64,000 bases of DNA from Asterias rubens (lineage: Eukaryota). Under the pieces are notes generated by a model. That model did no database searches. It was not told the DNA's origin and saw only the letters and a list, made by a program, of their open reading frames with translations. Position numbers and translations under genes: made by a program. Location: positions 1,364,001 through 1,428,000 of the forward strand of contig NC_047070.1 of NCBI RefSeq assembly GCF_902459465.1. Reading direction: 5' to 3'. This document shows positions 9,743 through 46,700 of the stretch, one piece after another; the stretch's first letter is position 1; each line of letters starts with the position of its first letter.

Positions 9743-11086
9743 AAGCCGCCCTTTGGTGTCCAATTAACGGCTAAGCAGATTTTTGATGCTAAGCAAATTT
9801 TGTCATGTTTAGCAAATGAGGATAAGCTAATTAGCCAGATGAAATACATTAATGTGCTTGTTTGGTTTAACAATATTTGTATCACCAAAGGAGATATACT
9901 TGATTTCAAAGTGACCAGAGAAAATTTTACAAGCCTATCCAGCATAATTTGTGCTGTATAGTTGGCATCTAATTGAAACATACTTTACAGTTGAAGTCAG
10001 TGTTTGATTGTAGGACCCTACATGGATCACTGGCCCCCGTCTGCAAAACATTCACTGCGAAAACAGCCCTGAGACATCATAATTCGCTTCGCATTCGTAG
10101 GAAGTATGAACCGGGCTTTATTCAAGTGCTAACACTTGTCTGAGTGTAGCACTCGTGTAGGTTATACAAAATATAATTGCAATATGTATTCTTGTGATTG
10201 GCACCTTTGAATGTGCATGCAGTCTGGCAGCAATTTGCACCACACCTGAAGGGCAAAATTTCATTGTTGTTTTGGCTGGTGGTTGCCTAACTCAGTCGTT
10301 GCTTAGCAAAGACATTTGTCAACCAGTATTTTCTGCTAAACAGCTTTATGAAATTGGGCCCAGCTATTGCTCTTTTCCGATGCCACACAGGTCAACCTTG
10401 AAGCCCTGTTGTAATGACTTCAATTAAAAGTAATTAACAATCCACGCCCATTAATGGCAGTGGACACTATTGGTAATTGTCAAAGACTAGCCTTCACAGT
10501 TGGTGTATCTCAACATACGCATAAAACAACAAACCTGTGAAAATTTAACCTCAGTCGGTCATCGAACTTGCGAGATAATAATGAAAGAAAAAACACCCCT
10601 GTCACACGAAGTTGTGTGCATTTAGATGGTTGATTTTGAGACCTCAAGTTCTAAATCTGAGGTCTTGAAATCAAATTCGTGGAAAATAACTTCTTTCTCA
10701 AAAACTATGGCACTTCAGAGGGAGCAATGTTTTGTACCATCGACCTCACCCCGCCACTCGTTACCAAGTAAGGTTTTATGCTAATAATTATTTTGAGTAA
10801 TTACCAATAGTGTCCACTGCCTTTTAAACATCACCTCGTTTACTTGGGCAGTTTAGCAAAACTTAAATCCAGTTATTTTTATTACCGGGCTATGGAGTCG
10901 GCTCCTGTATTTTATCAAATGTATTGATTTATAAAGATGAAATATATTTGACAACACTTTGAATGAACTAACTCATCCAAAAACCAATAATATTCCATCA
11001 ATGTTTCAAGTTCTTTGGTAACAAAAGAAAGAACTGCAAACTGAAAGTTTTCTTTAAAAAAGTGTGAAAGTAACTTGAAAGAACTC

Positions 11087-16900: not shown

Positions 16901-19766
16901 ATCTAATTTTACAAAGTGACAAATTATTTTTATATATTACTGCCAAAAGAAAAATATTTTTCTTCTAGTTTGAGAGAAAAAGCAAAACTTTTCCTACAAA
17001 AAAAAAAATAATTTTACAAAGTGACAAAGTATTTTTTATAAATTACACCAACAAGATAAATATTTGTCTTTTAGGTTTGAAAGGAGATATATTTGGAAAA
17101 GCTTACCAGTACTTGTGTTGATGTCAAATGTTTTTAACGTATGATCTAATCCTGCACTGTAGGTATGGGTTTGATCCTGTGTGGGAGAGAGTAATGTCAA
17201 CACAGAAAATGAGCTGTCTATTCATCAACAAATCAAAGGAAATGTAAATTGGAAGTTAAGAAATAAATCGTTGTTTATTATTATTATTATGGTTTATTTA
17301 TTAACTGCACTGGCGGCCAAGCAGGCCGAAAAAGTACATTTACAAGTAAAAATAGTTTGTTTAAAAAAATATGTATAAATATATATATATAAATAATGAA
17401 TAGGGTAGATGGCCTTAGCTTTCGATCCAATCCGGACCTTCTTCAGAGGCATAAAACAAGTACAAACAAATACATATCCATTTATAGAAAAAGAGAGGGG
17501 GAAAGGGATTAAGGAAAGGATCCAGAAAGAAGCGGGAAAATAACAGCCAATCAAAGTTCCTATTTCAGAAACAATATTGGTGGCTATGAACCAATAGGAG
17601 TGAAGTGGCGAGGACAAAGGATGTTTAGAATGAAAGGAAGGGTTACTGGACCATAAAAGTGGTAAATGTATTGTTCGACAACAATGCAGGGAGACATGAA
17701 AGGGTAGGATTAGAGAGCAAGTTGCATCATGATGCAACTAACAATGGTCAATTAATAAGAATAGCAAGATCAAAGGTATGATGATTTTAAAAATAGGTAT
17801 GAGGGACCTGTGGAAAAAAAGGGGGGGGGGGTTACTTACATCAGATAGTTACAGTGATGAATTTATAAAAACAACTTTAAACTAGGTTAATTTATACTTT
17901 ATGTACAGAATATATACAACATACAAGTTCTTAGGCAGAAGTGAAGTGGAGGGTAATGAGAAGTTATTTAACACCAGTGTTTATGTTAAGTCCAAAGGGT
18001 TTGACTGTCTTGAGTTGGTGAATCCAGTGTGATTCTCTATTCTTGCGGTGTGTGTCATCACCATTGCAAGCTTCAATCACCAGAAGTTCAACATCAATGA
18101 CACTATGATTGGGGCTGTTGAAGTGGATAGAGACTGGGTACGGTTTCTTAGCCTTTATGGAAGAGACATGATATATATATATATATATAAATATGTAATT
18201 ATTTTAAAATTAATTGCAAGAACAACGCAAAAGCACATTAAAAAGCTTGAATCAACACTGGTGGTCAGGCAGTCCAAAAAGAACGTATTACAAGTAAAAC
18301 GTATTACAAGATTAAAACTAAATGAATAATAAGCTTGGACATTCATAAAACTGTTGAGGGACCCAAAGATTGTTCCCTGAGCAAGTTCCCTGAGCAAGCA
18401 AAATTATAGTCAATAAAACAAAACATGTCACTGTGTGACCTGCTTGGATCAAATTAAACTTAAAGGGATACGTTGCCTTGCATCGGGCAAGTTGGTCTAT
18501 GAAAATAGTTGAAAAACACATGGTTAGAAAGATGTTTTAAAAGTAAAATACAGTGATCAACACAAGTAAGCCTAACAATTGATTGGTCCACCATTTAGTG
18601 GAGTCAAATATTTGACTCTACAAAATGGCGTGAGGTTAGTTTAAAATATTAAACATTTTCAGAAAAAACAAAAACTTTTGGATCATTATCAAAGAATGAC
18701 CCTACTATTTAGGCATACATATAATAAATAAATCTCATAAAAAATGATGAAATTCATACAAAATGATATTATTATGAAACACAGCCAAGAAATTAATTGT
18801 ACATGATTTACAATTAAAAAACAAAAGAAGTGAATGAAAGTTTACAGCAACGTTAAGTACATAACAAAAAATACATTAAAATATTGCACAGAGTAAACAA
18901 GTAAAAGAGTAAAAGCGGGAAATGGTACAAATAATTTGAGGGTTATTCAATGGGAATCTGTAAGGAAAAGAAACAATGAAAAAGTTTTCATCTGCAAGTA
19001 TATGGGACACTCTTGAAGGAGCACGATTATTTTGAGTAATTATCAACAGTCGGGTCCACTGCCTTAAAGGCAGTGGACACTATTGGTAATTACTCAAAAT
19101 ATTTATTAGCATCGAACCTTACATGGTAACAAGTAATGGGGAGAGGTTGATAGTATAAAACCATTGTGAGAAATGGCTCCCTCTGAAGTAATGTAGTTTT
19201 CGAGAAAGAAGTAGTTTTCCACGAATTTGATTTCGAGACCTCAAGTTCAGAATTTAAGGTCTCGAAGTCAAGCATCTGAAAGCACACAACTTCGTGTGGC
19301 AACGCAAGGGTGTTTTTTCTTTCATTATTATCTCGCAACTTCGATGACCAATTGAGTTCAAATTTTCACAGGTTTGTTATTTTATGCATATGTTGAGATA
19401 CACCAAGAGAGAAGACTTGTCTTTGACAATTACCAATAGTGTCCAGTGTCTTTAAAGATCTACATGTATCTAAGCTCTTTGTAAAGTTACACAATTTACA
19501 AATGATAGAACAAACAAAACTTTTAATAAAATGTTTTTGGTAAAAATGATCAGAAAACTTTGACCTACATAAAAGCAGCAGTCCAGAACAGCGTGGGTAT
19601 GATTGTATTTAGTTCTCATCACATTGGCCTCAATGTCGTACAATCTAACGCTCTCATCCCAGGACGATACCAGAAGAAACTGAGATGTGTTCGGACCAAA
19701 CTTGACTGATGATATGCCATCATTGGCACATTGGTTCAATTTGAACTCGTTCGATACTTCAGGCAT
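13919..19766 (-). CDS. BUB3: Mitotic checkpoint protein BUB3 (WD40), 325 aa
   Basis: Exons 19569-19766, 17107-17176, 16319-16470, 15508-15771, 14533-14705, 13919-14039 (978 nt). NEFKLNQ...DGISSVKF; [11 protein letters not shown]; EGRVAVEY; YAFKCHRLK; [12 protein letters not shown]; ...ETKPK*. The ATG exon acceptor is at 19780, so a non-coding first exon lies upstream. Confidence 0.97.
14435..14480 (-). ncRNA. Degenerate minimal hammerhead ribozyme motif (Penelope pLTR remnant, family H2)
   Basis: - strand GTCTC-CTGACGA-T-GACTAG(AACAAG)CTAGTC-GAAG-GGTT-GAGAC; GAAAC is mutated to GAAGG. Confidence 0.6.
15088..15469. mobile_element. TTAA MITE family B
   Basis: TIR TTAAAGGAACATTACAGAATTGG / CCAATTCTGTATTACGTTCCTTTAA. 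Confidence 0.85.
16509..16548 (-). ncRNA. Minimal hammerhead motif, U3-A8 variant family H3 (degenerate)
   Basis: - strand GCCT-TCGATAA-A-AACTC(TGTTA)GGGTC-GAAAC-GTC-AGGC. Confidence 0.55.
17400..18170 (-). mobile_element. Penelope-like element 3' fragment: GIY-YIG endonuclease C-terminus plus 3' terminal repeat
   Basis: - strand 18170-17964 translates [68 protein letters not shown], matching the PV..HF...RE..WI..L.T..P.GLN signature of Penelope endonucleases; hammerhead at the 3' end. Not in the ORF track. Confidence 0.85.
17411..17450 (-). ncRNA. Intact minimal type I hammerhead ribozyme motif (family H1)
   Basis: GCCT-CTGAAGA-A-GGTCC(GGATT)GGATC-GAAA-G-C-TA-AGGC: complete CUGANGA/GAAA core, 5-bp stem II, 4-bp stem I, palindromic AGCT stem III, CUA cleavage triplet. 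Confidence 0.75.
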
Positions 19767-23755: not shown

Positions 23756-25696
23756 ACCTGCAAGTGTGATAACATTTCATTATTCGATGTTAAACATTTC
23801 GTTTACATTAGTGATATACATTTTTGCATTTACGACCTAAATACTTTAATTACTATTGTTGCAGTAAAATTCACTTTAAATAGTCACTGATGAAAATGAC
23901 TTGACGATTACTTAAATTTGTACCGTATAGTTGATTGAAACTTGTTTTGTTCAACCTTCAATTCCTCCCAACCCAGTTCAGAAATTATTTCACATTATTC
24001 TGATATTAAACACATAGTGAAGTGGCCATCATATTTTTGCTTCATAATAAAGAAACACTGTACCAAAGTGATCTAACTAACTAAGTAGTAAAAGGCAAAA
24101 TGTTGAACATAAATTAAACCACAAAATTGAATTTGCCAATTTCTTTTAAAAAAACCCACCTTGGTTAAACATTGAGGTCTCTTAAAAGTGTCTTAATTTA
24201 ACTTTGTCTGAAAGATATTTACCAGTTTTAACCCTCTCAATATTAGCACATTCTTAATAATTAAAGGCAGTGGACACTATTGGTAATTACCCAAAATATT
24301 TATTAGCATAAAAACTTTCTTGGTGACGAGTAATGGGGAGAGGTTGATGGTATAAAACATTGTGAGAAACAGCTCCCTCTGAAGTGCCACAGTTTTCGAG
24401 AAAGAAGTAATTTTCCACGAATTTGATTTTGAGACCTCAGGTTTAGAACTTGAGGTCTCGAAATCAACCATCTAATCGCACACAACTTCATGTGACAAGG
24501 GTGTATTTTTCTTTTATCATTATCTCGCAAGTTCGATGACAGATTGAGCTCAAATTTTCACAGGTTTGTTATTTTATGCATATGTTGAGATACACCAACT
24601 GTGAAGGCTAGTCTATGACAATTACCAATAGTGTCCACTGCCTTTAAAAGAGAAACACAACAATAAAACTTAGGGGAATTATTTTAATGGAGGTACAAAT
24701 ATCGACTGCTTTGAGCGCTATGGTTTAAGCTACCCCAAGGTGTTCCATTAAGCATTCTATTTATCCGTGTCAATGCCATGTGAAAAAATGCTGCTCCAGA
24801 TATCACAAGAAAGTTGTAGTTTTAACTATTGCTCAGGAAAATAAGTAAACATTTGTTACAACACCTGGGTATAGTACATTGGTTACTACAGGTATTATAT
24901 ATTGATTGCGTCGTGCTTGCACAGCTTTCTAGCAAAAGTAAGACATGTCAGATGGTGAGCTCTAAACCAATCAAAAGGTAGAATCCAAGTGGTGGGTACC
25001 ATAAAACAGCTAAAGGGGCACTGTCATTATGATCAGAGGGAGTCTGTGGACAGATATTTACTTCTTTTACTCTCACCCAGTTACAGCACACGCCTGTGCA
25101 AAAATAATGAAGGTGCCCTTCAAAGCTATTGTTTGTGCTATGATGGTTATCAAGCATGCATGCGGTGACTGGGTGAGAGTTCATGAGTCCATGTCTTGCC
25201 ACAAGCAGACTATAATCACGATGAGCGTACCTGTAAGTCGCACAAATTCAAGTTTGCCAAATTTCATGGCTCTGCTTACCCCCATATTCTGTGCTTACGA
25301 TCACCAGTCGCCGCTTACTATGCAAGCGCAGACGCTAGCTGTGTATGCGAAGAATGCCTAGTAACAAGGAGTACGCACACGCACAAGTAAAAATTCCATG
25401 CAAATCTGTGAAATACGCTTGACATTAGCCCATAATCTCCTGCTTCCATCCGTAAGCGTTGATTCTTTTATTACAGTAAGCAGAGCCATGAAATTGGGCC
25501 CAGATTAGGGTGGTGAGTTAACCATACAAATCTGATGACAAGGACAAAATTGTTTCCACAACTTCTGGAGGCAAGCCGGTAACTAATAAAAGAAAAAAAT
25601 CTACAAATTTGATTTGCAGCTGTTTGGTTTGAACAAATTAAGGCCACTTGAATTTGACTCTCTTTCGTTTGCAGCATCGGATGATTGGGCAAAATG

Positions 25697-28600
25697 TTAC
25701 CTTGCTTTGACGTTCTTCACTATCCACTCCATTCCTTCCTGTGTGATTCAAACAAATTGAGAATTAAGAGAGCTGTCAATATTCTTGAATAATAGTGAAG
25801 CATGTTTGAAGCTCAGGTTTGTTTGTTTGTTTGAATGATTTTCCCAAACAGGGAACTCGGCAAACTGTTTTCAGAGTAGTGTGGCGACGAAGGTTTAAGG
25901 TATAAAGAGTTGAAAATCAGTTTGAAACAAAGAAAGATTGGAAATTATTCACTTTTCACATGACAGCATTTTAACAATTTTCCCATGCTCAAGTTTGACA
26001 TTGTAGCTGAATCACTTGTGCAATATTTTAAGTTGTTTAATTTATCTACAAGTTTACTTTTTATTTATTTAATTGTTTTCTTTTATTGTTTATCCTTACC
26101 TTATCTGTAATTTCTACTTATTTATTTTAATTTATTTTTGTATTCTTATTATATATTTATAATTAAATTTGCTATTGGTTGTATAATTATCTGGTTTTGT
26201 TATTGCTTTGTGTACTATATTATGTTAAATCTATATTAATTTTATTGTGTACCCCAGATGTGGGGCAACAGATCTACGGATCATAGTATGTATTTGCTTT
26301 TGTTGTCCCTTGCCCATCTTGGGGTAATATTGTCAATGTATTTTGTTTTGTACTGTTATGGCAAATAAAATAATAATAATATAAAAACAAAAATGCACCT
26401 GGTGTGAATGAACAATAACTTGTGCACTGTTCCAAAAGTATGCCAACTTAGAGAAGTTTTTGCAAGGGATTATGGCCAGTCCAAATATTGTCCTTTCACA
26501 CAAAATGCAACTTGTAAAATTTCACAACCTTGCTAAAATAAAGCAACGGACTCCTGCTAAACTGCTGTCGTGTGAAAAGGGTTTGATAAGACAAGGAAGT
26601 TCTCACCTCAACTCCTTCCCCTGTGACTGCAGAGCAAGCATTGATCTGCCAAACACGGTTCCTTATTGTGTGAAGATTTAAGCCTTCCGCAATATCTGCT
26701 GATGTTGCTGCGCTAATAAGGTCCTGCTTATTTGCAAAGACTAGCAGTGGTACACCGGATAATTTCTCTTCTTCCAATAGCTGGCCAAGCTCCTTAAGAA
26801 AATAAAAGTGTTTTTTAAATTAAATTTGTACAATTTTGTCTTGTCTTGATTGATACTGCACCAACACCCCTTCTAAGTGATCACACAGACAGGGTTGGTT
26901 CTCCTTCTTCTTATCATGTCCACACACTAGATGTTGTGTTTCAGCCAGAACTGGACACAGCTCCTAGCAATATCATTATACTCTGCAAGGTCCTCAGGTT
27001 TGCATTCTGGCTCCAGTAGGGGGCATCCCAGGAGGTGCTCCACAGTTTGTGACTCTGTCTCACAAATGCAGGGTTGGTGGTGCATATGGAACTGACAACC
27101 ATGCCAGAAATACAGGGGCAAACCCCTTCTCTTAAAAGTGTACTTTTTACGGGCATACACAACACACAGGACTGACCAGTACATCCAATCCAAAGCTTAC
27201 TAACTACTTCCTGGGCTATGTAGGAAAATCAGTCAGTACTACTACTTCCACTTAGCATGCTTAGTGGATTGATGCGATTCCCATTATTAACTTCACTGCT
27301 AAGGAGTGAGTTTGAATTGATCTCACGTTTCGACTAGCCTGGTCTAGTCATTGTCAGGAGACTGAAGAGTGTTTAAGATGCTGGTCTTTTTATAGATGGA
27401 TTGCACTAAGCGTCATCAACCGCCTTAACTGATGATAAACAATGCAAAATTCATACGTGTTCATTTAAGCCAATGATAGCCTTGCATGTGCGCACATTTC
27501 ACCAAATATAGCATTGATGACACTTAGTGACATTAATCTATAGGGGTTCAGTCAGCACTGCTCAGTGCCCAATTTCATAAAGGTGTTAAGCAGAAAATAC
27601 TGCTTGAAAATTTTCTTTGCTAAGCAAAAATTGAGTCGTGCACCAGCCACAACAATACAAACTTGATGTTATTTGGGCTGGTAACTAGCCTGTTTCTGCT
27701 TAGCAATACTATTCTGGCTTAATGAAATTGGGCCCTGGTTGGTTCTTCTGAAAGAACAACTGTTGTTTGAGGGCTCGGGTTATTGTGTAGGCTTCCTTGA
27801 TTTCATAAATAAACTAACAAAAGTTAATTCAGTGGAGGTGTCATGGCCGAGCGGTCAAGATTACAGCCACCGAACTCAAGCTCTGACCAGATCAAGGGAG
27901 TATGGGTTCGGGAGTCGTGACACTTGTGTCCTTAAGCAAGACACTTAACCACTGCTTTGTCCTTCGGATGAGATGTAAAGCTGTAGGTATTATTATTGTT
28001 ATAACAACTATCAACGCACGCAAAAGACCCCAGTACCCACTTATCTCAAAGAGAAGGGGTTTGCCCCGGTTTGTCTGGTAGTGCGACTATCTTCAATTAT
28101 GATGACTGCACTTGAAAGGAAGAAGAAGAAGAAGAAGTATTACCTCTCCTGTTTCCTCCAAGCGTGTAGTGTCTGCACTGTCTATTACATAAATTAGAAC
28201 ATCAGCTTTCTCATAGTAGTTCCCCCAGTAAGGTCGAATCGTTCTCTGACCTATGGAATAAAGTTTTTAAGTATTAACTCTTTTGTTTTTAACCTATGAA
28301 TGCTTATACTTCTTTTTATGTTTTTTTTAAATTTTCAATTGACTACAAGTAGTCCAGCTGACCAAGACCCAATTTCATAGAGCTGCTAAGCACAGAAACT
28401 TGCTAAGCATGAAATTTCTTCCTTGATAAAAACAGGACTACCAGCCAAATTTCCATTTGTTGCATATTGCTTGGTACTGGTATTCACCTGTTGTTTGCTG
28501 ATCCTGAAAATCACATGGTGTTACCGCAAACTCTTCTATATCTTATTTCCACCATGCAAAGTTTCAAATCCTACTTGAAATTTGGTTGGTAATCCTGTTT

Positions 28601-30152
28601 GTTGTCAAGGAAGAAAATTCATGCTAAGCATATTTTCTTGTACTTAGCAGCCCTAGGAAATTGTTTTTTTTTCAGTAATTCAAAGCCAAGCTAGTGAAAT
28701 GACAAGCTAACTGGTTCTTCTGGCCAGTCATTGAAGACAGTACAGGGCAAACCCTGGTAGCCCATTACCATCTCCTCCAATTTTATTTAAAAAAACAAGA
28801 GGAATCAGGCCCAGGCCTTGGTAGGGAGGGGGAGGGGTGGTGTTATAGAAACAGACTAACAACAACCAGTGAAATTACAATCAGGTTTTACCCTAAAATG
28901 TTTCAGTTACTGTCTAGCAGGACCAATTAGCTTGGCATTACAATAGTCTGTCAGCCTTTTCACTGGTTTGTATTTCAAATGATAACACAGGGGCTTTTAA
29001 AACTGTCGAACCACTTGGAGAAATCTTTGACTGGTCTTCGGGTGTTTTAACTGCCATCTGGCCAGCGGACCACTGGATTTGGGTACTTTTTGTAACACAA
29101 AACACAATATCCACAGATTTACATAAACTTACACCTTTTGAAGATAATTATAGTCAAAAGCTTACCTTAAACCAATTAGTAGCTAAGGTGCTGTAGTAAA
29201 ATAATGTCAAGAAAATACGTTTTACATGCTAAAATTTTGTGACTTGTTTTACTCATTTCTCAAAAACTACAGTTACTCAGCAAGTAATATTTAAAGGGAA
29301 TCTTTCTACCACCATTATTTTTGAACTGTGTGAGTTTAATGTGGATCTGTGTGTACATTGTGTTTTGTGTCCTACAAAAAGTACCCTTAAAAGGGAGAAC
29401 GCTGACAACACTCACCTCCAACATCCCACACATTCAAGTCCACACCGTGGCATTTGACAGTCTTGATGTTGAATCCTAGCGTTGGTGTCATGTGACTGAT
29501 ATCTTCTTGAGCTAGTCCTCGAATGAGCGTTGTCTTGCCGGCGTTGTCAAGACCAAGGAGGAGGATCTGAAGTTTGCGGTTTGGGTTGCTACCCAATTTG
29601 GCCTTCAAAAAGGCCAGTAAGCCCTAAAAGTACAAGAAACGAAGAGAAGTTAATAATGATCCACTTAATAAGCTTAAGTAGTAGTCCCAGCCCATTTTCT
29701 AACTTCCGTCCAGGTAGTACCAGTAGTTAAAAAGCAGGACAGTTGTTTTCAGAACCGAGAAGTCTCCAGAATTCCAAGTACATGTGTATGTACCCATGGT
29801 AGAAGAAGGAAATGTATCACAGCAAAGAAGTCACTACAACTTAAAACTGCAAAATTTGATGGCTTATTATTTTAGCCTCAAGTAAAACTTAGCCAGCGCA
29901 GCAGCATTACAGCAATATCTCATTATTATTACAATAAACAAATAATATATGACAATCAAATGCAAATAAAACAGTTAAAATAAAGCCCCCCCCCCCTCCA
30001 AGTCTCTCTCCCTCTCTCGCTCCGGATCACTGAGATCATGGTCATGGATAGCTGCATAAAAAGACTAACTTACCAAAGAAGATTTAAGAAGTAAAACAAA
30101 AACCAATTCTACTGTCCAGAGTTATCAAGTTATTATCCATCATCATTACCAT
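25697..30152 (-). CDS. ARL3: ADP-ribosylation factor-like protein 3 (ciliary small GTPase), about 181 aa
   Basis: Exons 30150-30152 (ATG only; inferred micro-exon 30150-30190), 29416-29623, 28144-28250, 26607-26792, 25697-25738. [44 protein letters not shown]. The ATG exon is less certain than the rest. Confidence 0.9.
26905..27085 (-). mobile_element. Non-LTR retrotransposon C-terminal CCHC fragment (I/Nimb/Ingi-type) with GATAAGAAGAAG tail
   Basis: [19 protein letters not shown]...DL...ND.A..C..FW...I*; a similar C.CG..QTISHII.DCP fragment lies at 54590-54710 (-). Confidence 0.7.
27321..27363 (-). ncRNA. Degenerate minimal hammerhead motif, family H2
   Basis: TCTC-CTGACAA-T-GACTAG(ACCAGG)CTAGTC-GAAAC-GT-GAGA; G8A without compensation and 1 nt lost at the cleavage site. 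Confidence 0.6.
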
Positions 30153-37304: not shown

Positions 37305-40300
37305 CAAGTAACCTACTTGTAGATATCGTTAGATTTTGTGAATCCAAAAATCAATAGAGTTTTTTAATCGGTCACCAATACTACATGTAAACCGAAATAC
37401 ATACACATAATTTCAGTAATTCTAAATGCACTTCTTAAAGGAAGGGTCATACTTTTGATCTACCCCCCCCCCCCCCACCAATTAAAATAAATAAATAAAT
37501 ACAGTTCTAACCAAAAAGCTTCCTTGTTATAAAAACGGTATTGTACTGTATAGTAAGCATCCTGTAAAGTTATATTGTCTGAAATGCCATTGATTAGAAA
37601 TCAATAAAAACATTTGAATCCAAGAAAGATTATTGCATAGATTTGACATTCTTGTGAAAAACTGACAGTTTTTTTGCTGCTTTCTCAGCAAGTTGATACT
37701 TTAATCAGCTAAAACTTTCACATGAGGTGACTTGTATTGTATGTTTCTTTTATATTTGGCAAAAATGATGACCCTACCATGAAGGCAGTGGACACTATTG
37801 GTAATTACTTTAAATAATTATTAGCATAAAACCTTTATTGATTACGAGTAAAGGGGAGAGGTTGATAGTATAAAACATTGTGAGAAACAGCTCCCTTTGA
37901 AGTGAGGTAGTTTTCGAGAAAGAAGTAATTTTCCACGAATTTGATTTAGAGACCTCGGATTTAGAATTTGAGGTCTCGAAATCAAGCATCTGAAAGCCAA
38001 CAACTTCGTATGACAAGGGTGTTTTTTCTTTCATTATTATCTCGCAACTTCGATGACCAATGAGCTCAAATTTTCACAGGCTTGTTATTTTATGCATATG
38101 TTGAGACACACCAATTGAGAAGACTGATCTTTGACAATTACCAATAGTGTCCATTGTCTTTAAAACAAACAAAATATTTTAATTTAAATAATTCTCAGAA
38201 CACTTGATAAGATAAATCTATCAGCAGAATTGTTGTTGTTGCTTTGTTGTGGTCAAATGGCAGGTATAAACATAATAATCATGAAGTCTAAAGAAAATAT
38301 TAACAAGGACCATACTTACTTAGGGCCGTTTTAATTATCAACATTTTCACAAGCTTAAAAACCATACATTTTTTCAATACCTCCTACCTCCCCCTAAAAG
38401 TGTAAAATGAAAGATGTTGGTTTTATTCACAATATTCTACATAGAGATACTTGAATGTGAATTGCATGCGATCCATGTTTGTTATGAGTACAGATTCAGA
38501 TAAAAGAACATATAAAGAAGACGAGCAGAGTATACTGTTCGAAACGTTGAGTCCCAACCGGCTCTTTTCAGAGCCAACACTCACCCTAAGAGATTTACAC
38601 ATGGTTGTACCCGCAAGTTTACTGTTTAGTTATAGTTTCTTCTTATTTCTCCACACCATGCAAAGCTTCAAACAATACGTACACATGTTAAATACATGTA
38701 ATGCCGTAAATCGTAATTTCATGTGTATAAGACGCAGCTTATCTGTAAAACAGCTTCTTATCTACAGTGTGAAAAGGTTTTAAACCCCCTACCTCCCAGC
38801 GTACAGTTTGCACACTGGTGAAAATGTTGACAATTGTACAACCCCTTACCTAAGCATACTGTAACATTACTCTAGTGAGGTGTAAAGTCATATCATTGGG
38901 GACAGGTGTGCACTTTATAATGAAGTCTTCTTTTCATTCTATGATCTCACTAAACTATCTAATTACAAAGGGCTCTTCTGCAAGATGTTTCTGCAGTGGA
39001 TATTTGATGGTGATGAAAAATAACTGTTTTATAAGAGCTGGCTTTTTCAAGTGTCAAATATTCAATGTCCGAGGCCTAACAAAAAGGAAATGAAATCTTG
39101 TTTTGAAATGGGGAAGTATTAGGATTTTGTTGAAAGCTCTTTGTAATCAGGGATTATTGATTACATTCTAAAGTATAACAAAATTCCTTGGTTTATCTTA
39201 CTGAGTGTATTGCTGTATTTTAGCCCAGTCTCCCACGACCCAATTTCATTGAGCTGTTTTAAATCAGAAAATGGCACTTATTCATTTTGTTTCAGCTAAG
39301 CAGAAATTAGCAGGGAACCAGTCACAAACAATGTACATTAACATGGTACTTTGGTTGGTACAGGATGGTAACCTGTATCTACTAAGCAAGATTTATGAGG
39401 CCCAGTAATCAAGCAGTGCTTGGAAACTGGGTCCGCTCATAGACTTCACTTCATGAATAAAACTAATCTAGATCTACATGTAAAAACCCTTGGGCTAAGG
39501 GACCTGCTTGAAAATTGCTCAGTTTATGTAGATTGAAGTGGATAGATGTTTACTAATCATTGATATGTAGAATTCATATCAAACCAGCCTGCACATTTGG
39601 ACTGGGTCTGGAATTACATAGACCATGGTCTTTGTTGCCCCTTTATTGATTTCCCCATAGACTTTAAGATTTGTCAGATTTGTCAATGTTTAGAAGTGCC
39701 CTTTGAAATTTGAAGATGTTTGAATACGCCTGCTGTATTGTGATGTTGCAAGGCTCTAAGTTTTAGTTCCCATATGAGTAAATGATAACTGATTTTTTAT
39801 GTATACAATGTATAATTTTCTCATCCAATTTATAAGCTGAGTATTTAATTATTATTATTGCCAATCATCTGTCCATATTAAATAATCCAAAAACCATGGC
39901 AATGTGCATATATCTAAAAGTGCTAATTCGGAGGAACGATGGGGGGGGGGGGTGTCTTTAAGGTACTCCATGCTACCTTAGAAATGTGGAACCTGAGACC
40001 TGAAGTTGTAACCTTACTGTATGTATTGCACAAAATAACACCCAGTTATAAACACTTGATTTATTTTGATACAGCATTGTTCAGTATTTTATCTCAAACT
40101 CATAATGTAGAAAAGATTTTCACTTTTTTCACATTTTTGTAACCTGATACCACAAGAAAAGTTATTAATTAAGAAATGTAATCAAGATTCAAGTGTCATT
40201 GTCATCTAAACTTCCCTGATTAATGTACATCTACCTTAATAGGGATATAGTTGTATAACTACCCTAATTCAGATAATTTCCAGCCTGAATTGGGATATAA

Positions 40301-43715: not shown

Positions 43716-46700
43716 CAATTTACTATTTTTAGCATTTCTATTGTATGTACTTTTTTTCTCAAAGATAGTTGTTTAGCATAAAATGTGCATATAAAGCAGA
43801 ACCATGTAAAAGTTAGGTTTAAAGTACCATAAGATGCACTGGATTAGTTACTCAAAGTAACTGTTAGCATACAAACTTCTGAGCATTAGAGAGCTGTTGA
43901 TTATAAAACATTGTGAGAAATGGCTCCCTCTGAAGTAAAGTTTTTGAGAAGAGGTAATTTATCACTTTATAAAAAAAAACGTCTTCAGGCCTGAAGCCTT
44001 TCATAAGGCATCTGAAAGCACACAAAGTTTGTCCAACAAGGGTGTTTTTGTCTTTCATTATTCGATTGCAACTTCGATGACCAATTGAGTCAAAATGTTC
44101 ACAGATTTGTTTAATAATGGGATACAAGTGAGAATACTTGTCTTTGACAATTACCTAACGTGTCCAATGCCCTTTAAGTACAATAAAATGACTCATGCAA
44201 AGTGGGATAACCTATGGGATTGGTGAGATCAAGTTGCCTGTGATCTATGGAGGTGGCTGATAATATGTAACCTTTGCAAAGAGTCCTTTTTGTTTAATCC
44301 TTGGAAATATAGGCCAGTTAAAATTTATGGATGTTTCTCATCGACCAATCTCTGGATATTGATGAGTAATTTCTTCTTTTTTTCCACTTTTTTTTTTTTT
44401 ATCCCTGTCAAAGAAAATATGCTTCCATAGAAGAAGAAAAAATTATAAAATAATACATTTCTTGGATGGGCATAAAAAAGGATACTATATTGACTACATG
44501 GAAATATATTAATAAATTAATAATTAATATTTTCCAAGGTGGGCCAAAAAAAAAACGCAGGTGTTGAAGAGAAACAAAATTTCAATTTTTATTGGCCTAT
44601 ATGGAATTTATTGTGGATGGATTTCTCACAAGATGACATTGGTCAATGAACCCTCATGGGGCGGCCATCTTGTTTATTTACCATCCAAATCAGTTGAGGA
44701 TGGAAGGAATCCCTCAATATAACATTATCGTGATTGCACAGAATTATTAAACAAATAAAAATGTAAACAGTTGAGTTATATACATGTACAAATTGATGAT
44801 CATTCTAGAAAGATTAATAATTTCACACACAAAAAATAATAAAATAAAAATGTTAAAAGAGTGAAAGGAAAAAAACCGAGTCAGCATTCATAAAAAAATA
44901 AAAAGTAACTCTCCTTGATTCTGGTAGACAGGATTGATACAGCTGCCAAAATAGTCGCAGGCAGTGTTCATGTTTTGTTTTTTCGCTCATATACAGGAAA
45001 TAACTACCCAGTGAAGTTTTTTTATTAAACCCGTTGTGTGAGAAAGTAATGAAAACATGCACAATATTTAGCATGTTAACACACTGTCCTTGATTTTTGG
45101 GTTGTAACAAATAAAATCAGATGTTGCGTTTTGGGGTGGTTTTCACAGCTAGTTTTCCAAACTATGATGTCATTTCCAACGCTCAATACCTTAAACACAA
45201 ACCATAAAACAATATTTTCACCCTAATATTCATATAGAAGTGTTATTATCAACCGACCAAAAGGAAAACACTCATGAGCAGATGTGTCGCCTGAGATCCA
45301 TACAAACATCAGAGCTACTTCACCCCGAGCCTAAAACCAATCAATAGTTAATTCCTGAAATGCAGTGACGTACTTCGACTCCCCCCTCCAAAGAGAGTCA
45401 CTAATGACGGAGACTCAGACCATTTTAGAAAAGGGATAATGTATTTATTGTCTCCATGATCTTAGCAATTAAATTATACGACCGCTTGTTGTTAGTCCAT
45501 GTGCAAAACCAGAGAAAATTATGTACAAAATATATATAACAGTTTTGTGTCCTTCAATTATTAAGCTTGAATATATAATCATGTAAACATTCGTTATAAA
45601 TGCAAAGTTATTCTCAATATGCTTTCATTATGTTATAAGACACGAATAATCATGAATATTTAAACAAGGTAAAACAATTTTCCTTTTATCTATCAAGTCA
45701 AAGTTGAATAATTAGTTCCTTGAGAAGTAGGGTATACCTTTGGTAATAACTCCAACATTTATTAAGCACAAAAACTTGCAGCTGTTGATAATGTATAACA
45801 TTTTGAGAAACAATTCCCTTCTAAAAGACATGATTTTAAAGAAAAGGATTCAACAAAAATTTCATGCAAAAAATATTTCTCTGATTGTGTATTCCAATTA
45901 AAGATTTATCTTCCGGCATGGACATAAAACTGCTCCTGATTTACAACTGAAAACGCTATAGCCTTATGAAATGAAAATTTGTACAGGTTAATTTTTGTTA
46001 TACATCTTCATTTCCAAAGTTCCAAAAACAAAAGGTATACTTCTAGTGCATGGAGTAAGTAAATCCTTTGTCTGCCAGGTCCGTATTATTGAAGCTAAAA
46101 ATGAAATTAGCATATGCAATCATAAACTCAGAGGTCATTTATTCTATTCAAGCAAGCTCAGGAGTAGATCAAAGACGCTGTTTTGGAAAATTAGTAAAAC
46201 AATAATTGATGATTGCTGGAAAAAAGATTGCAGAAATGATAAGGACAACACCAACATTAATCTGAATTTCTTGAGAAGCATAAACATCTTTCTGTTACAA
46301 AATATACAATTTCAGGTTGAACAAAGACAAATTTACTTCAGCTAGAGGATTTGAACCTGCGACCTCCAGAATAATGTTCCAGTGCTCTACTAACTGAGCT
46401 ATCTAGCCCTAACGTTGGTGGTTGTCAAGATCTTTGTTTTGGGGGGAGTTGGATATTATCAATGCTCTTATTAGAGACAAACGAGAAGAGAGAAGACAAT
46501 GAAGAAATTCTGGTTTTTGATGTGGGAGGAACACCCAAGAAAATTATTCCAGGGAAAACCCCCACAGTCAAGTAGAAACTGAAAACCCAATCCACATAGT
46601 GCCTTGATGGTATTTGAACCAGGGACCCAGAGGTGGAAGGCGAGGCAAGACACCACTACACCAACCTGACTAATAAGAAGCCATTCAACCTGTTAACTGT

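What the first reader, a model, noticed from the sequence alone, without database searches (positions are those of the whole stretch)
17400..18170. Penelope fragment places an intact hammerhead ribozyme, in sense, inside BUB3 intron 2
A GIY-YIG endonuclease tail (17964-18170) is followed about 510 nt later by a complete minimal hammerhead (17411-17450): CUGAAGA core, 5-bp stem II, GAAA, a compensated G15.2-C16.2 pair (AGCT palindrome instead of ACGT) and a CUA site. Penelope-like elements are known to carry such loopless-stem-III hammerheads that cleave as dimers. Here a single intact copy is transcribed within an essential checkpoint gene. Inference: it could cut only in trans with a second AGCT-type copy (another BUB3 transcript or element RNA), a potential concentration-dependent RNA switch.
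Basis: partly seen in the sequence, partly recalled or inferred. Interest (0 to 1): 0.7.

Follow-up and report, generated by a model that had tools for sequence, protein, structure and literature searches.

The report
Penelope retroelement fragment in BUB3 intron
This is an ordinary, very young, cut-short copy of a Penelope-like jumping gene that landed in an intron of the BUB3 gene and carries the small self-cutting RNA motif typical of such elements; it is one of about 400 identical copies of that motif in this genome, and nothing suggests it regulates BUB3.

Summary
Window 17394-18170 (minus strand) is a 777-nt, 5'-truncated copy of a Penelope-like element (PLE). It consists of the last 68 codons of the GIY-YIG endonuclease, a 514-nt 3' UTR and a minimal type-I hammerhead motif (17412-17450, predicted cut between 17416 and 17415). 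It lies in sense in a 2,392-nt BUB3 intron (17177-19568), which RNA reads show is spliced out.

The motif meets every sequence criterion published for metazoan PLE "min-HHRs" (Cervera & de la Peña 2014). It is not special to BUB3:
- The 34-nt core occurs 408 times exactly in this 418-Mb genome.
- The family has over 1,000 copies at 98-99% identity.
- The window copy has only 2 private substitutions.

The "concentration-dependent RNA switch" has no support:
- There is no second motif in the 64-kb window.
- The predicted trans-dimer is weak (Kd about 0.1 mM).
- There is no pile-up of read ends.
- Published single min-HHRs do not cleave detectably.

Verdict: a known kind of element, and a recent, probably neutral intronic insertion. 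This scan has already noted other PLE-type hammerheads in this genome, including one in host-gene sense in an intron. Whether the insertion is polymorphic in the population could not be resolved.

The parts
17394..18170 (-). 5'-truncated copy (777 nt) of a high-copy Penelope-like retroelement, flanked by (TA)n-rich DNA on both sides
   Evidence: 40 scored genome matches at 98-100% identity out of 1429 candidates; all 29 other copies extend further 5', and all end at ...CTATTCATTA; the window region aligns to the last ~800 nt of a 4.45-kb unit; only 2 private substitutions.
17964..18170 (-). [quoted passage not shown]
   Evidence: One search gives the translation; 67/68 identical to residues 841-908 of the 908-aa ORF; that ORF has RVT_1 (6e-11) and GIY-YIG (3.2e-5, residues 813-895). 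On its own the 68-aa remnant gets no Pfam hit.
17451..17963 (-). 3' untranslated region of the element, between the stop codon and the hammerhead
   Evidence: It is conserved at about 99% among copies and holds no ORF of note.
17412..17450 (-). Minimal type-I hammerhead motif (PLE 'min-HHR'); predicted cleavage between 17416 and 17415
   Evidence: the isolated 42-66-nt RNA folds with stems I and II as its MFE structure. The features match PMC4209133. Rfam gives no hit.
17394..17411 (-). 3' tail of the element beyond stem I (the post-cleavage stretch AGGCCAUCUACCCUAUUCAUUA begins at 17415)
   Evidence: identical in 29 of 30 copies, and similarity ends at ...CATTA. In 14 of 30 copies it is followed by (TA)>=4.
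17177..19568 (-). BUB3 intron (2,392 nt, phase 0, GT..AG) that hosts the insertion; the first intron within the coding sequence
   Evidence: table 5: joint 17175->19568 (cut +1) in RNA run X21 (4 reads, 3 starts) and in a 1,125-nt transcript contig of X16 with 0 mismatches.
19569..19766 (-). BUB3 first coding exon ([12 protein letters not shown]...LDCCFY)
17106..17176 (-). BUB3 second coding exon ([23 protein letters not shown]...); the 3' boundary is approximate
   Evidence: The acceptor is fixed by the RNA joint; the donor was not verified.

Best explanation
A recent retrotransposition of a C-terminal-endonuclease Penelope-like element landed in an AT/(TA)n-rich spot of the first coding-region intron of BUB3. 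As is usual for this class, it was truncated at its 5' end, so only the last 777 nt remain. The element has a single 908-aa ORF with RT and GIY-YIG domains and a CX2-5CxxC linker of the Neptune/Nematis type.

The hammerhead motif is a standard part of the element's 3' end (pseudo-LTR). In the element's own life cycle it is thought to process multimeric or tandem transcripts by pairing two copies through the palindromic AGCU helix III. Its necessity for that is itself unsettled.

In the BUB3 intron the lone copy is a passenger. As a monomer it cannot form helix III. It is transcribed as part of the pre-mRNA and removed with the intron by normal splicing, and it has no demonstrated effect on BUB3.

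Shown here: the anatomy, copy number, youth, orientation and splicing. Inferred: that the copy is catalytically inactive at this locus and selectively neutral.
For: Family and anatomy:
- The 771-nt query finds 1429 candidates, and the 40 scored are 98-100% identical.
- All 29 other fetched copies extend further 5', and all share the same 3' end.
- A long copy shows a 4.45-kb unit preceded by a partial upstream copy, the pseudo-LTR arrangement.
- That copy has a 908-aa ORF with RVT_1 and GIY-YIG domains and a CX2-5CxxC motif at residue 774.
- 14 of 30 copies abut (TA)>=4, matching the published (TA)n target bias, 5' truncation and 3' HHR position of PLEs (PMC8557442).

Motif:
- 408 exact copies of the 34-nt core against 0 for the control.
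- 1142 AGCU-type pattern matches against 98 for the control. A second family has a stem II (GUAGU/GCUAC) that differs from GGUCC/GGAUC by compensated pairs.
- All published min-HHR hallmarks are present (PMC4209133).

Youth: 2 private substitutions in 777 nt.

Passenger status:
- One motif only in the 64-kb window.
- The intron is spliced.
- No read-end pile-up (table 6).
- RNA depth over the element tracks DNA copy depth bin by bin (table 2).
- Weak predicted dimerisation.
- In its 201-nt native context the hammerhead stems are not in the MFE fold, and the z-score is 0.
- Single min-HHRs were inactive in vitro (PMC4209133).
- HHR mutants did not affect PLE insertion in vitro, and no RNA-seq ends were found at the HHR site of another PLE (PMC11167929).
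Against: No cleavage assay was possible. The RNA runs laid were ordinary RNA-seq of a related organism or population (organism B shows fixed exon differences). Intronic flank depth was only 0-3 reads, so locus-specific cleavage could not have been seen. Family RNA is roughly 50 times deeper than BUB3 exons in those runs, so trans partners do exist in the cell. Nearest-neighbour energies ignore hammerhead tertiary contacts and possible protein chaperones. Whether the insertion is fixed or polymorphic was not resolved.
Confidence: 0.9

Rival explanations
1. The intronic hammerhead is cut in trans after pairing through AGCU with a second copy, either another BUB3 pre-mRNA or abundant element RNA. 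BUB3 output would then fall as the partner RNA concentration rises, making a concentration-dependent switch.
For: The motif has an intact core and a palindromic helix III that can only form between two copies. About 400 identical partners are encoded in the genome, and family RNA is present at roughly 50 times BUB3 exon depth. PLE min-HHR dimers show some cleavage in vitro (PMC4209133; Lünse et al. 2017, as cited in PMC6765202).
Against: Predicted dimer free energy is only about -5 kcal/mol (Kd about 1e-4 M), and the true double-hammerhead fold sits +2.7 kcal/mol above two monomers. No read-end pile-up was seen, and the intron is spliced. The copy is as young as its 1,000+ siblings, so nothing points to selection here. 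Published in vitro activity is low even for covalent dimers and needs non-physiological Mg2+ (PMC4209133). From general knowledge: slow ribozymes placed in introns generally do not reduce mRNA output because splicing is co-transcriptional.
Confidence: 0.03
2. The fragment matters to BUB3 through something other than ribozyme activity. For example, the pseudo-LTR part could act as an internal promoter that starts transcripts running into exon 2, or it could supply cryptic splice or polyadenylation signals.
For: PLE promoters are reported to lie in the pseudo-LTRs, which drive the downstream copy in a tandem (PMC6765202). The fragment is in sense, 217 nt upstream of the acceptor site. Downstream flank bins are slightly deeper than upstream ones (about 3-5 against about 1 read).
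Against: RNA depth across the element mirrors DNA copy depth with a nearly constant ratio, so there is no sign of an internal start (table 2). Flank depths are too low to mean anything. No joint linking the element to BUB3 exons was among those listed (15 of over 1,000 shown). The canonical exon1-exon2 joint is the one observed.
Confidence: 0.04
3. The hammerhead-like motif is not a working ribozyme in any context. Instead it is a conserved RNA element of the PLE with another role, for example recognition by the element's protein, or a parasite of the PLE.
For: HHR catalytic mutants did not change PLE insertion in vitro, and no RNA-seq ends were found at the HHR site (PMC11167929). HHR-less Naiad PLEs proliferate well (PMC8557442). 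Rfam models do not score the motif. The native-context fold does not favour the hammerhead stems.
Against: All catalytic core positions are intact in 408 copies, though the family's youth explains that too. Core mutations abolish, and compensatory changes restore, cleavage in another PLE HHR (PMC11167929). Between-family compensated changes in stem II preserve the hammerhead architecture.
Confidence: 0.03

Closest known systems
Minimal hammerhead ribozymes (min-HHR) of metazoan Penelope-like elements (Cervera & de la Peña 2014, PMC4209133; Lünse, Weinberg & Breaker 2017 as cited in PMC6765202)
   Same: Type-I topology and a CUGANGA...GAAA core. An unpaired nucleotide between A9 and G10.1. A G10.1-C11.1 pair. 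A short helix I (4 bp). No loop 3, with palindromic 15.2-16.2. Location in the element's terminal repeat. Most genomic copies are single motifs in truncated elements.
   Different: Nothing of substance. Helix II is 5 bp, against 7-8 bp in the Schistosoma families. The palindrome is AGCU rather than ACGU; the descriptor allows either, and both types occur in this genome. High uniformity (408 identical copies) resembles the D. virilis case of ongoing invasion rather than the usual heterogeneity.
Canonical C-terminal EN+ PLEs with a CX2-5CxxC linker (Neptune/Nematis clades; Arkhipova 2006 and Craig et al. 2021, PMC8557442)
   Same: A single ORF with RT then GIY-YIG. A CX2-5CxxC motif upstream of the GIY-YIG domain. 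Pseudo-LTR partial tandems, frequent 5' truncation and adjacent inverted copies. A (TA)n insertion bias. An HHR near the 3' end.
   Different: The clade assignment rests on motifs only; no phylogeny was made.
Conserved intronic hammerheads of amniotes (de la Peña & García-Robles 2010, cited in PMC4209133) and the CPEB3 intronic HDV-like ribozyme
   Same: A self-cleaving-ribozyme motif lying in sense inside an intron of a protein-coding gene.
   Different: Those are unique, deeply conserved, stably folding monomeric ribozymes with demonstrated cleavage. This one is a days-old (in evolutionary terms) repeat copy with no helix III, no conservation evidence and no cleavage evidence.
Animal non-LTR retrozymes (Cervera & de la Peña 2020, PMC7229834; Li, Clavereau & Pollet 2026 preprint, 10.64898/2026.07.22.740005)
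   Same: Type-I hammerheads derived from PLE pseudo-LTRs. This family does have 165-nt tandem mini-derivatives with two hammerheads elsewhere in the genome.
   Different: The window copy is a single, non-tandem, ORF-bearing fragment and cannot yield a circular RNA by double self-cleavage. The preprint reports retrozymes depleted from introns in vertebrates.

Membership tests
Hammerhead ribozyme, PLE minimal type-I variant (min-HHR) | Catalytic core C3 U4 G5 A6 N7 G8 A9 ... G12 A13 A14, with A15.1-U16.1 and H17 not G | tested here: met
   CUGAAGA ... GAAA, A15.1/U16.1 within AGCU, and A17.
Hammerhead ribozyme, PLE minimal type-I variant (min-HHR) | Helix II closed by a loop, with a G10.1-C11.1 pair and an unpaired nucleotide between A9 and 10.1 | tested here: met
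   GGUCC/GGAUC (5 bp), loop GGAUU, extra A at 17439. Helix II is in the MFE of the isolated RNA.
Hammerhead ribozyme, PLE minimal type-I variant (min-HHR) | Short open helix I (4-5 bp) | tested here: met
   GCCU/AGGC, 4 bp, present in the MFE of the 66-nt RNA. It is not in the MFE of the 201-nt native context.
Hammerhead ribozyme, PLE minimal type-I variant (min-HHR) | No loop 3, or a tiny one; palindromic 15.2-16.2 so that helix III forms only between two copies | tested here: met
   AGCU at 17420-17417. The double-hammerhead structure can be drawn as a nested fold, with energy -22.5 against -25.2 kcal/mol for two monomers.
Hammerhead ribozyme, PLE minimal type-I variant (min-HHR) | Structure kept through compensatory changes between families | tested here: met
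   a second AGCU-type family, CUGAUGA-A-GUAGU-UGUU-GCUAC-GAAAGCU. Three of its five helix II pairs are changed on both sides relative to GGUCC/GGAUC, and a fourth on one side (C-G to U-G). Helix I of that family was not examined.
Hammerhead ribozyme, PLE minimal type-I variant (min-HHR) | Recognised by the curated Rfam hammerhead covariance models | tested here: not met
   no hammerhead hit at gathering score or at E<=10. This is expected for loopless variants, which were found with relaxed descriptors (PMC4209133), so it is not disqualifying for the min-HHR class.
Hammerhead ribozyme, PLE minimal type-I variant (min-HHR) | Site-specific self-cleavage after H17 | tested here: inconclusive
   table 6: no position where many reads begin or end, at about 400x family depth. 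However, these are ordinary RNA-seq libraries and there is no locus-specific depth.
Penelope-like element (EN+, C-terminal GIY-YIG) | Single ORF with reverse transcriptase followed by GIY-YIG endonuclease | tested here: met
   on a long copy (RVT_1 6e-11; GIY-YIG 3.2e-5). The window fragment equals its residues 841-908.
Penelope-like element (EN+, C-terminal GIY-YIG) | Pseudo-LTR partial tandems, frequent 5' truncation, adjacent inverted copies | tested here: met
   a 1,789-nt partial copy lies directly upstream of a 4.45-kb unit; variable 5' ends, and a tail-to-tail inverted copy in L018.
Penelope-like element (EN+, C-terminal GIY-YIG) | Hammerhead motif near the 3' end or in the pseudo-LTR; microsatellite/(TA)n target bias | tested here: met
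   The predicted cut site lies 22 nt (stem I ends 18 nt) from the element end in all 30 copies. 14 of 30 copies are followed by (TA)>=4. The window copy has (TA)n on both sides.
Gene-regulatory intronic ribozyme (RECK/CPEB3 type) | Unique locus, conserved across species at the orthologous intron | tested here: not met
   Uniqueness fails: 408 identical copies. Cross-species conservation could not be tested because no relative genomes are available to the tools.
Gene-regulatory intronic ribozyme (RECK/CPEB3 type) | Folds into an active ribozyme on its own transcript | tested here: not met
   Loopless helix III, no second motif in the window, and a context-fold z-score of 0.
Non-LTR retrozyme | Tandem units, each bounded by hammerheads, that can release a unit-length or circular RNA | tested here: not met
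   A single motif at this locus. Tandem 165-nt derivatives exist elsewhere in the genome.

The most novel reading that the evidence does not exclude
The lone sense-strand min-HHR in the BUB3 pre-mRNA is cleaved in trans by abundant RNA of its roughly 400 identical sibling copies. Bursts of Penelope-element transcription would then lower the output of a single-copy spindle-checkpoint gene, giving a transposon-activity-to-checkpoint link.
Probability: 0.02. Interest if true: 0.6.

Novelty: already known. Interest (0 to 1): 0.1.

Why it matters
It matters little beyond annotation. It documents a very young, high-copy Penelope-like family with a uniform AGCU-type minimal hammerhead in what earlier notes of this scan call a sea-star genome, which I did not verify. 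It also shows that such copies sit in sense inside introns of single-copy essential genes without visibly disturbing splicing. The family could serve as material for the still-open question of what PLE hammerheads do, because it offers about 400 identical motifs, natural tandem mini-derivatives and expressed RNA. If the trans-cleavage idea were true it would be a new way for transposon activity to act on a host gene, but nothing found here favours it.

Tried and rejected
- **Rfam scans:** the whole window at gathering score and 17000-18600 at E<=10 gave no hammerhead hit. I did not take this as evidence against the motif, because loopless variants are known to escape such models.
- **Cis partner search:** relaxed AGCU- and ACGU-type patterns and BLAST of a full unit against the window found none.
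- **Cofolding:** the MFE dimer is a trivial strand-swapped duplex of the self-complementary helix II, not the double hammerhead. The true double hammerhead is +2.7 kcal/mol relative to two monomers. My first attempt, which kept helix I intramolecular, is a pseudoknot and was discarded.
- **Read laying (one call allowed):** it gave the splice joint and no end pile-up. Intronic flanks had 0-3 reads, so locus-specific cleavage is untestable. The RNA raw-read runs are of organism B, which shows fixed exon differences from the window.
- **Population presence/absence:** a junction-centred search had only 12 sampled words and no way to see which were held, so it was inconclusive. The first attempts at both run searches failed because the machine was busy.
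- **Lünse et al. 2017:** it could not be read and is cited only through PMC6765202.
- **Histone stem-loop:** I looked for one behind the hammerhead, as earlier notes report for another family. It is absent in this family and present elsewhere in the window.
- **BUB3 identity:** PDB hits were to human RAE1 (56 bits) and yeast Bub3 (44 bits) only. The low RAE1 score argues against RAE1 orthology, and an Atlas cluster named BUB3 scored 0.93. My recollection of human BUB3 also agrees. Not tried: a protein database search for a named full-length orthologue.
Full report
**What is there**

On the minus strand, window 18170 to 17394 reads as four parts:
- 68 codons ending in TAA ([22 protein letters not shown]...[12 protein letters not shown]).
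- A 514-nt untranslated stretch.
- The motif GCCU-CUGAAGA-A-GGUCC-GGAUU-GGAUC-GAAA-GC-UA|AGGC.
- An 18-nt tail beyond stem I, ending in ...CUAUUCAUUA.

Both flanks are (TA)n-rich. The hammerhead numbering fits exactly:
- C3-A9 lies at 17446-17440.
- An extra unpaired A sits at 17439.
- Helix II is 5 bp, with a G10.1-C11.1 pair.
- G12A13A14 lies at 17423-17421.
- A15.1-G15.2-C16.2-U16.1 forms a loopless AGCU palindrome at 17420-17417.
- A17 lies at 17416.
- Helix I is 4 bp (17450-17447 pairing with 17415-17412).

The predicted cut lies between 17416 and 17415.

**More than chance**

A relaxed pattern (CTGANGA, 8-38 nt, GAAAGCTH) occurs once in the window against 0.07 expected. The exact 34-nt core occurs 408 times in the 417.6-Mb genome and never in the reversed control. 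The relaxed AGCU-type pattern occurs 1142 times against 98 for the control. Rfam's curated hammerhead models do not score the motif, even at E<=10 on a 1.6-kb slice.

**What it belongs to**

The 771-nt stretch has at least 1429 candidate matches in the genome, and the 40 that were scored are 98-100% identical. All 29 other copies I fetched continue further 5' and share the same 3' end. The window copy is therefore a 5'-truncated insertion.

One long copy shows the full anatomy:
- A unit of about 4.45 kb directly preceded by a 1.79-kb partial copy of its own 3' part, which is the pseudo-LTR arrangement.
- One 908-aa ORF with reverse transcriptase (RVT_1, 6e-11) and GIY-YIG (3.2e-5) domains.
- A CX2-5CxxC motif just upstream of the endonuclease.

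The window's ORF remnant is 67/68 identical to residues 841-908 of that ORF. Fourteen of 30 copies are followed by (TA)>=4 and nearly all by AT-rich DNA. A tail-to-tail inverted copy and 165-nt tandem mini-derivatives with two hammerheads also occur.

Every one of these traits is described for canonical EN+ Penelope-like elements: 5' truncation, pseudo-LTRs, inverted copies, (TA)n targets, and an HHR near the 3' end (PMC8557442).

**The motif is the known PLE min-HHR**

Cervera & de la Peña (PMC4209133) list these features as emerging consistently:
- The G10.1-C11.1 pair.
- Palindromic 15.2-16.2.
- A short helix I (4-5 bp).
- Genome-wide families with compensatory changes.
- Most motifs being single copies in truncated PLEs.

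All are met here. A second family in this genome (CUGAUGA-A-GUAGU-UGUU-GCUAC-GAAAGCU) keeps the same architecture, with three of its five helix II pairs changed on both sides. The AGCU palindrome, as opposed to ACGU, is just one of the allowed palindromes.

**Host gene**

BUB3-like WD40 exons lie on the minus strand at about 19766-19569, 17176-17106, 16480-16330, 15771-15508, 14700-14535 and 14060-13922.

RNA reads give a joint that removes 17177-19568 with GT..AG ends. It appears in run X21 (4 reads) and in a 1,125-nt transcript contig of X16 that matches the exon without a mismatch. The element therefore lies in sense in the first intron of the coding sequence. It makes up a third of that intron, and the predicted cut site is 239 nt upstream of the acceptor. 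Whether this is 'intron 2' depends on an untested non-coding first exon.

The gene is single-copy in the assembly. Its identity as BUB3 rather than the paralogue RAE1 rests on four points:
- A low score to human RAE1 structures (56 bits over 78 residues).
- Full-length matches to yeast Bub3.
- An Atlas cluster named BUB3.
- My own recollection of the human protein.

**Does it do anything to BUB3?**

I found nothing that says so.
- **Age.** The copy has 2 private substitutions in 777 nt, so its intact core reflects youth.
- **No cis partner.** There is no second motif, and no second copy of the family, in the 64-kb window.
- **Weak pairing.** The isolated RNA forms helices I and II. The double-hammerhead fold is 2.7 kcal/mol less stable than two monomers in the nearest-neighbour model. 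The whole dimer ensemble is worth only about -5.3 kcal/mol, a Kd near 1e-4 M. In its 201-nt native context the hammerhead stems are not in the MFE fold, and stability equals that of shuffles.
- **No RNA signature.** At roughly 400x family depth, no position shows a pile-up of read starts or ends (table 6). RNA depth along the element follows DNA copy depth almost proportionally (table 2). This is as expected for passive transcription of many truncated copies, and gives no hint of an internal start or of processing.
- **Limits.** The libraries are ordinary RNA-seq of a related organism, and the unique intronic flanks had 0-3 reads. Cleavage at this particular locus could not have been seen.
- **Literature.** A single min-HHR gave no detectable cleavage, and dimeric or trimeric constructs gave little (PMC4209133). 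In another PLE, hammerhead mutants did not affect insertion, and no RNA-seq reads ended at the hammerhead site (PMC11167929). The biological role of PLE hammerheads remains unclear (PMC8557442).

**Verdict**

This is a known kind of element in an unremarkable situation: a recent, 5'-truncated Penelope-like insertion whose standard minimal hammerhead rides along in an intron that is spliced out.

Earlier notes of this scan describe other PLE-type hammerhead families in the same genome (some followed by a histone stem-loop), including one in host-gene sense in an intron. The present family lacks that stem-loop, but a decayed copy of the other family lies at 38530-38580 of this window.

Noticed in passing
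window 38530-38580 (+): The 3' half of a decayed ACGU-type minimal hammerhead (...CGAAACGUU), followed 12 nt later by a perfect histone-mRNA stem-loop GGCTCTTTTCAGAGCC at 38560-38575 (1 match against 0.08 expected). This matches the hammerhead-plus-histone-signal retroposon family that earlier notes of this scan describe. The BUB3-intron family has no such stem-loop.
   Followed up: partly
window about 19055-19465 (same BUB3 intron); related copies near 24300-24560 and 10510-10650: A MITE-like repeat of about 400 nt with terminal inverted repeats (CTTTAAAGRCASTGGACACTATTGGTAATT...). RNA depth is in the thousands in both RNA runs, and DNA contig depth is enormous.
   Followed up: no
L036:1230-1480 (G000:C2:8012230-8012480); also G000:C2:3838650-3838850: A 165-nt tandem mini-derivative of the same Penelope-like family: the 3' end with its hammerhead, about 85 nt of the element's 5' leader, then the 3' end with its hammerhead again. 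It is a retrozyme-like unit bounded by two identical hammerheads.
   Followed up: partly
genome-wide, e.g. G000:C1:11273739-11273768: A second AGCU-type minimal hammerhead family, CUGAUGA-A-GUAGU-UGUU-GCUAC-GAAAGCUC, whose helix II is compensated relative to the family studied here.
   Followed up: no
window 17431 (loop 2 of the hammerhead): About two thirds of family reads, in RNA and DNA runs of three coded organisms, carry U instead of A in loop 2 (GGUUU instead of GGAUU). The window's subfamily is therefore the minority variant across these samples.
   Followed up: no
window about 26500-29620 (-): Exons of an ARL-type small GTPase gene lie directly upstream of BUB3 on the same strand ([12 protein letters not shown]..., WDVGG..., NKQD...).
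   Followed up: no
window 46339-46408 (-): A tRNA hit at 35 bits (Rfam gathering score 29) with a defective T-arm. It is possibly a tRNA-derived repeat or a pseudogene.
   Followed up: no
L018 / G000:C7:2771050-2771434: A tail-to-tail inverted partial copy of a related subfamily (83-94% identity), separated from a family copy by about 30 nt of TA-rich DNA. This is the inverted-repeat arrangement described for PLEs.
   Followed up: no
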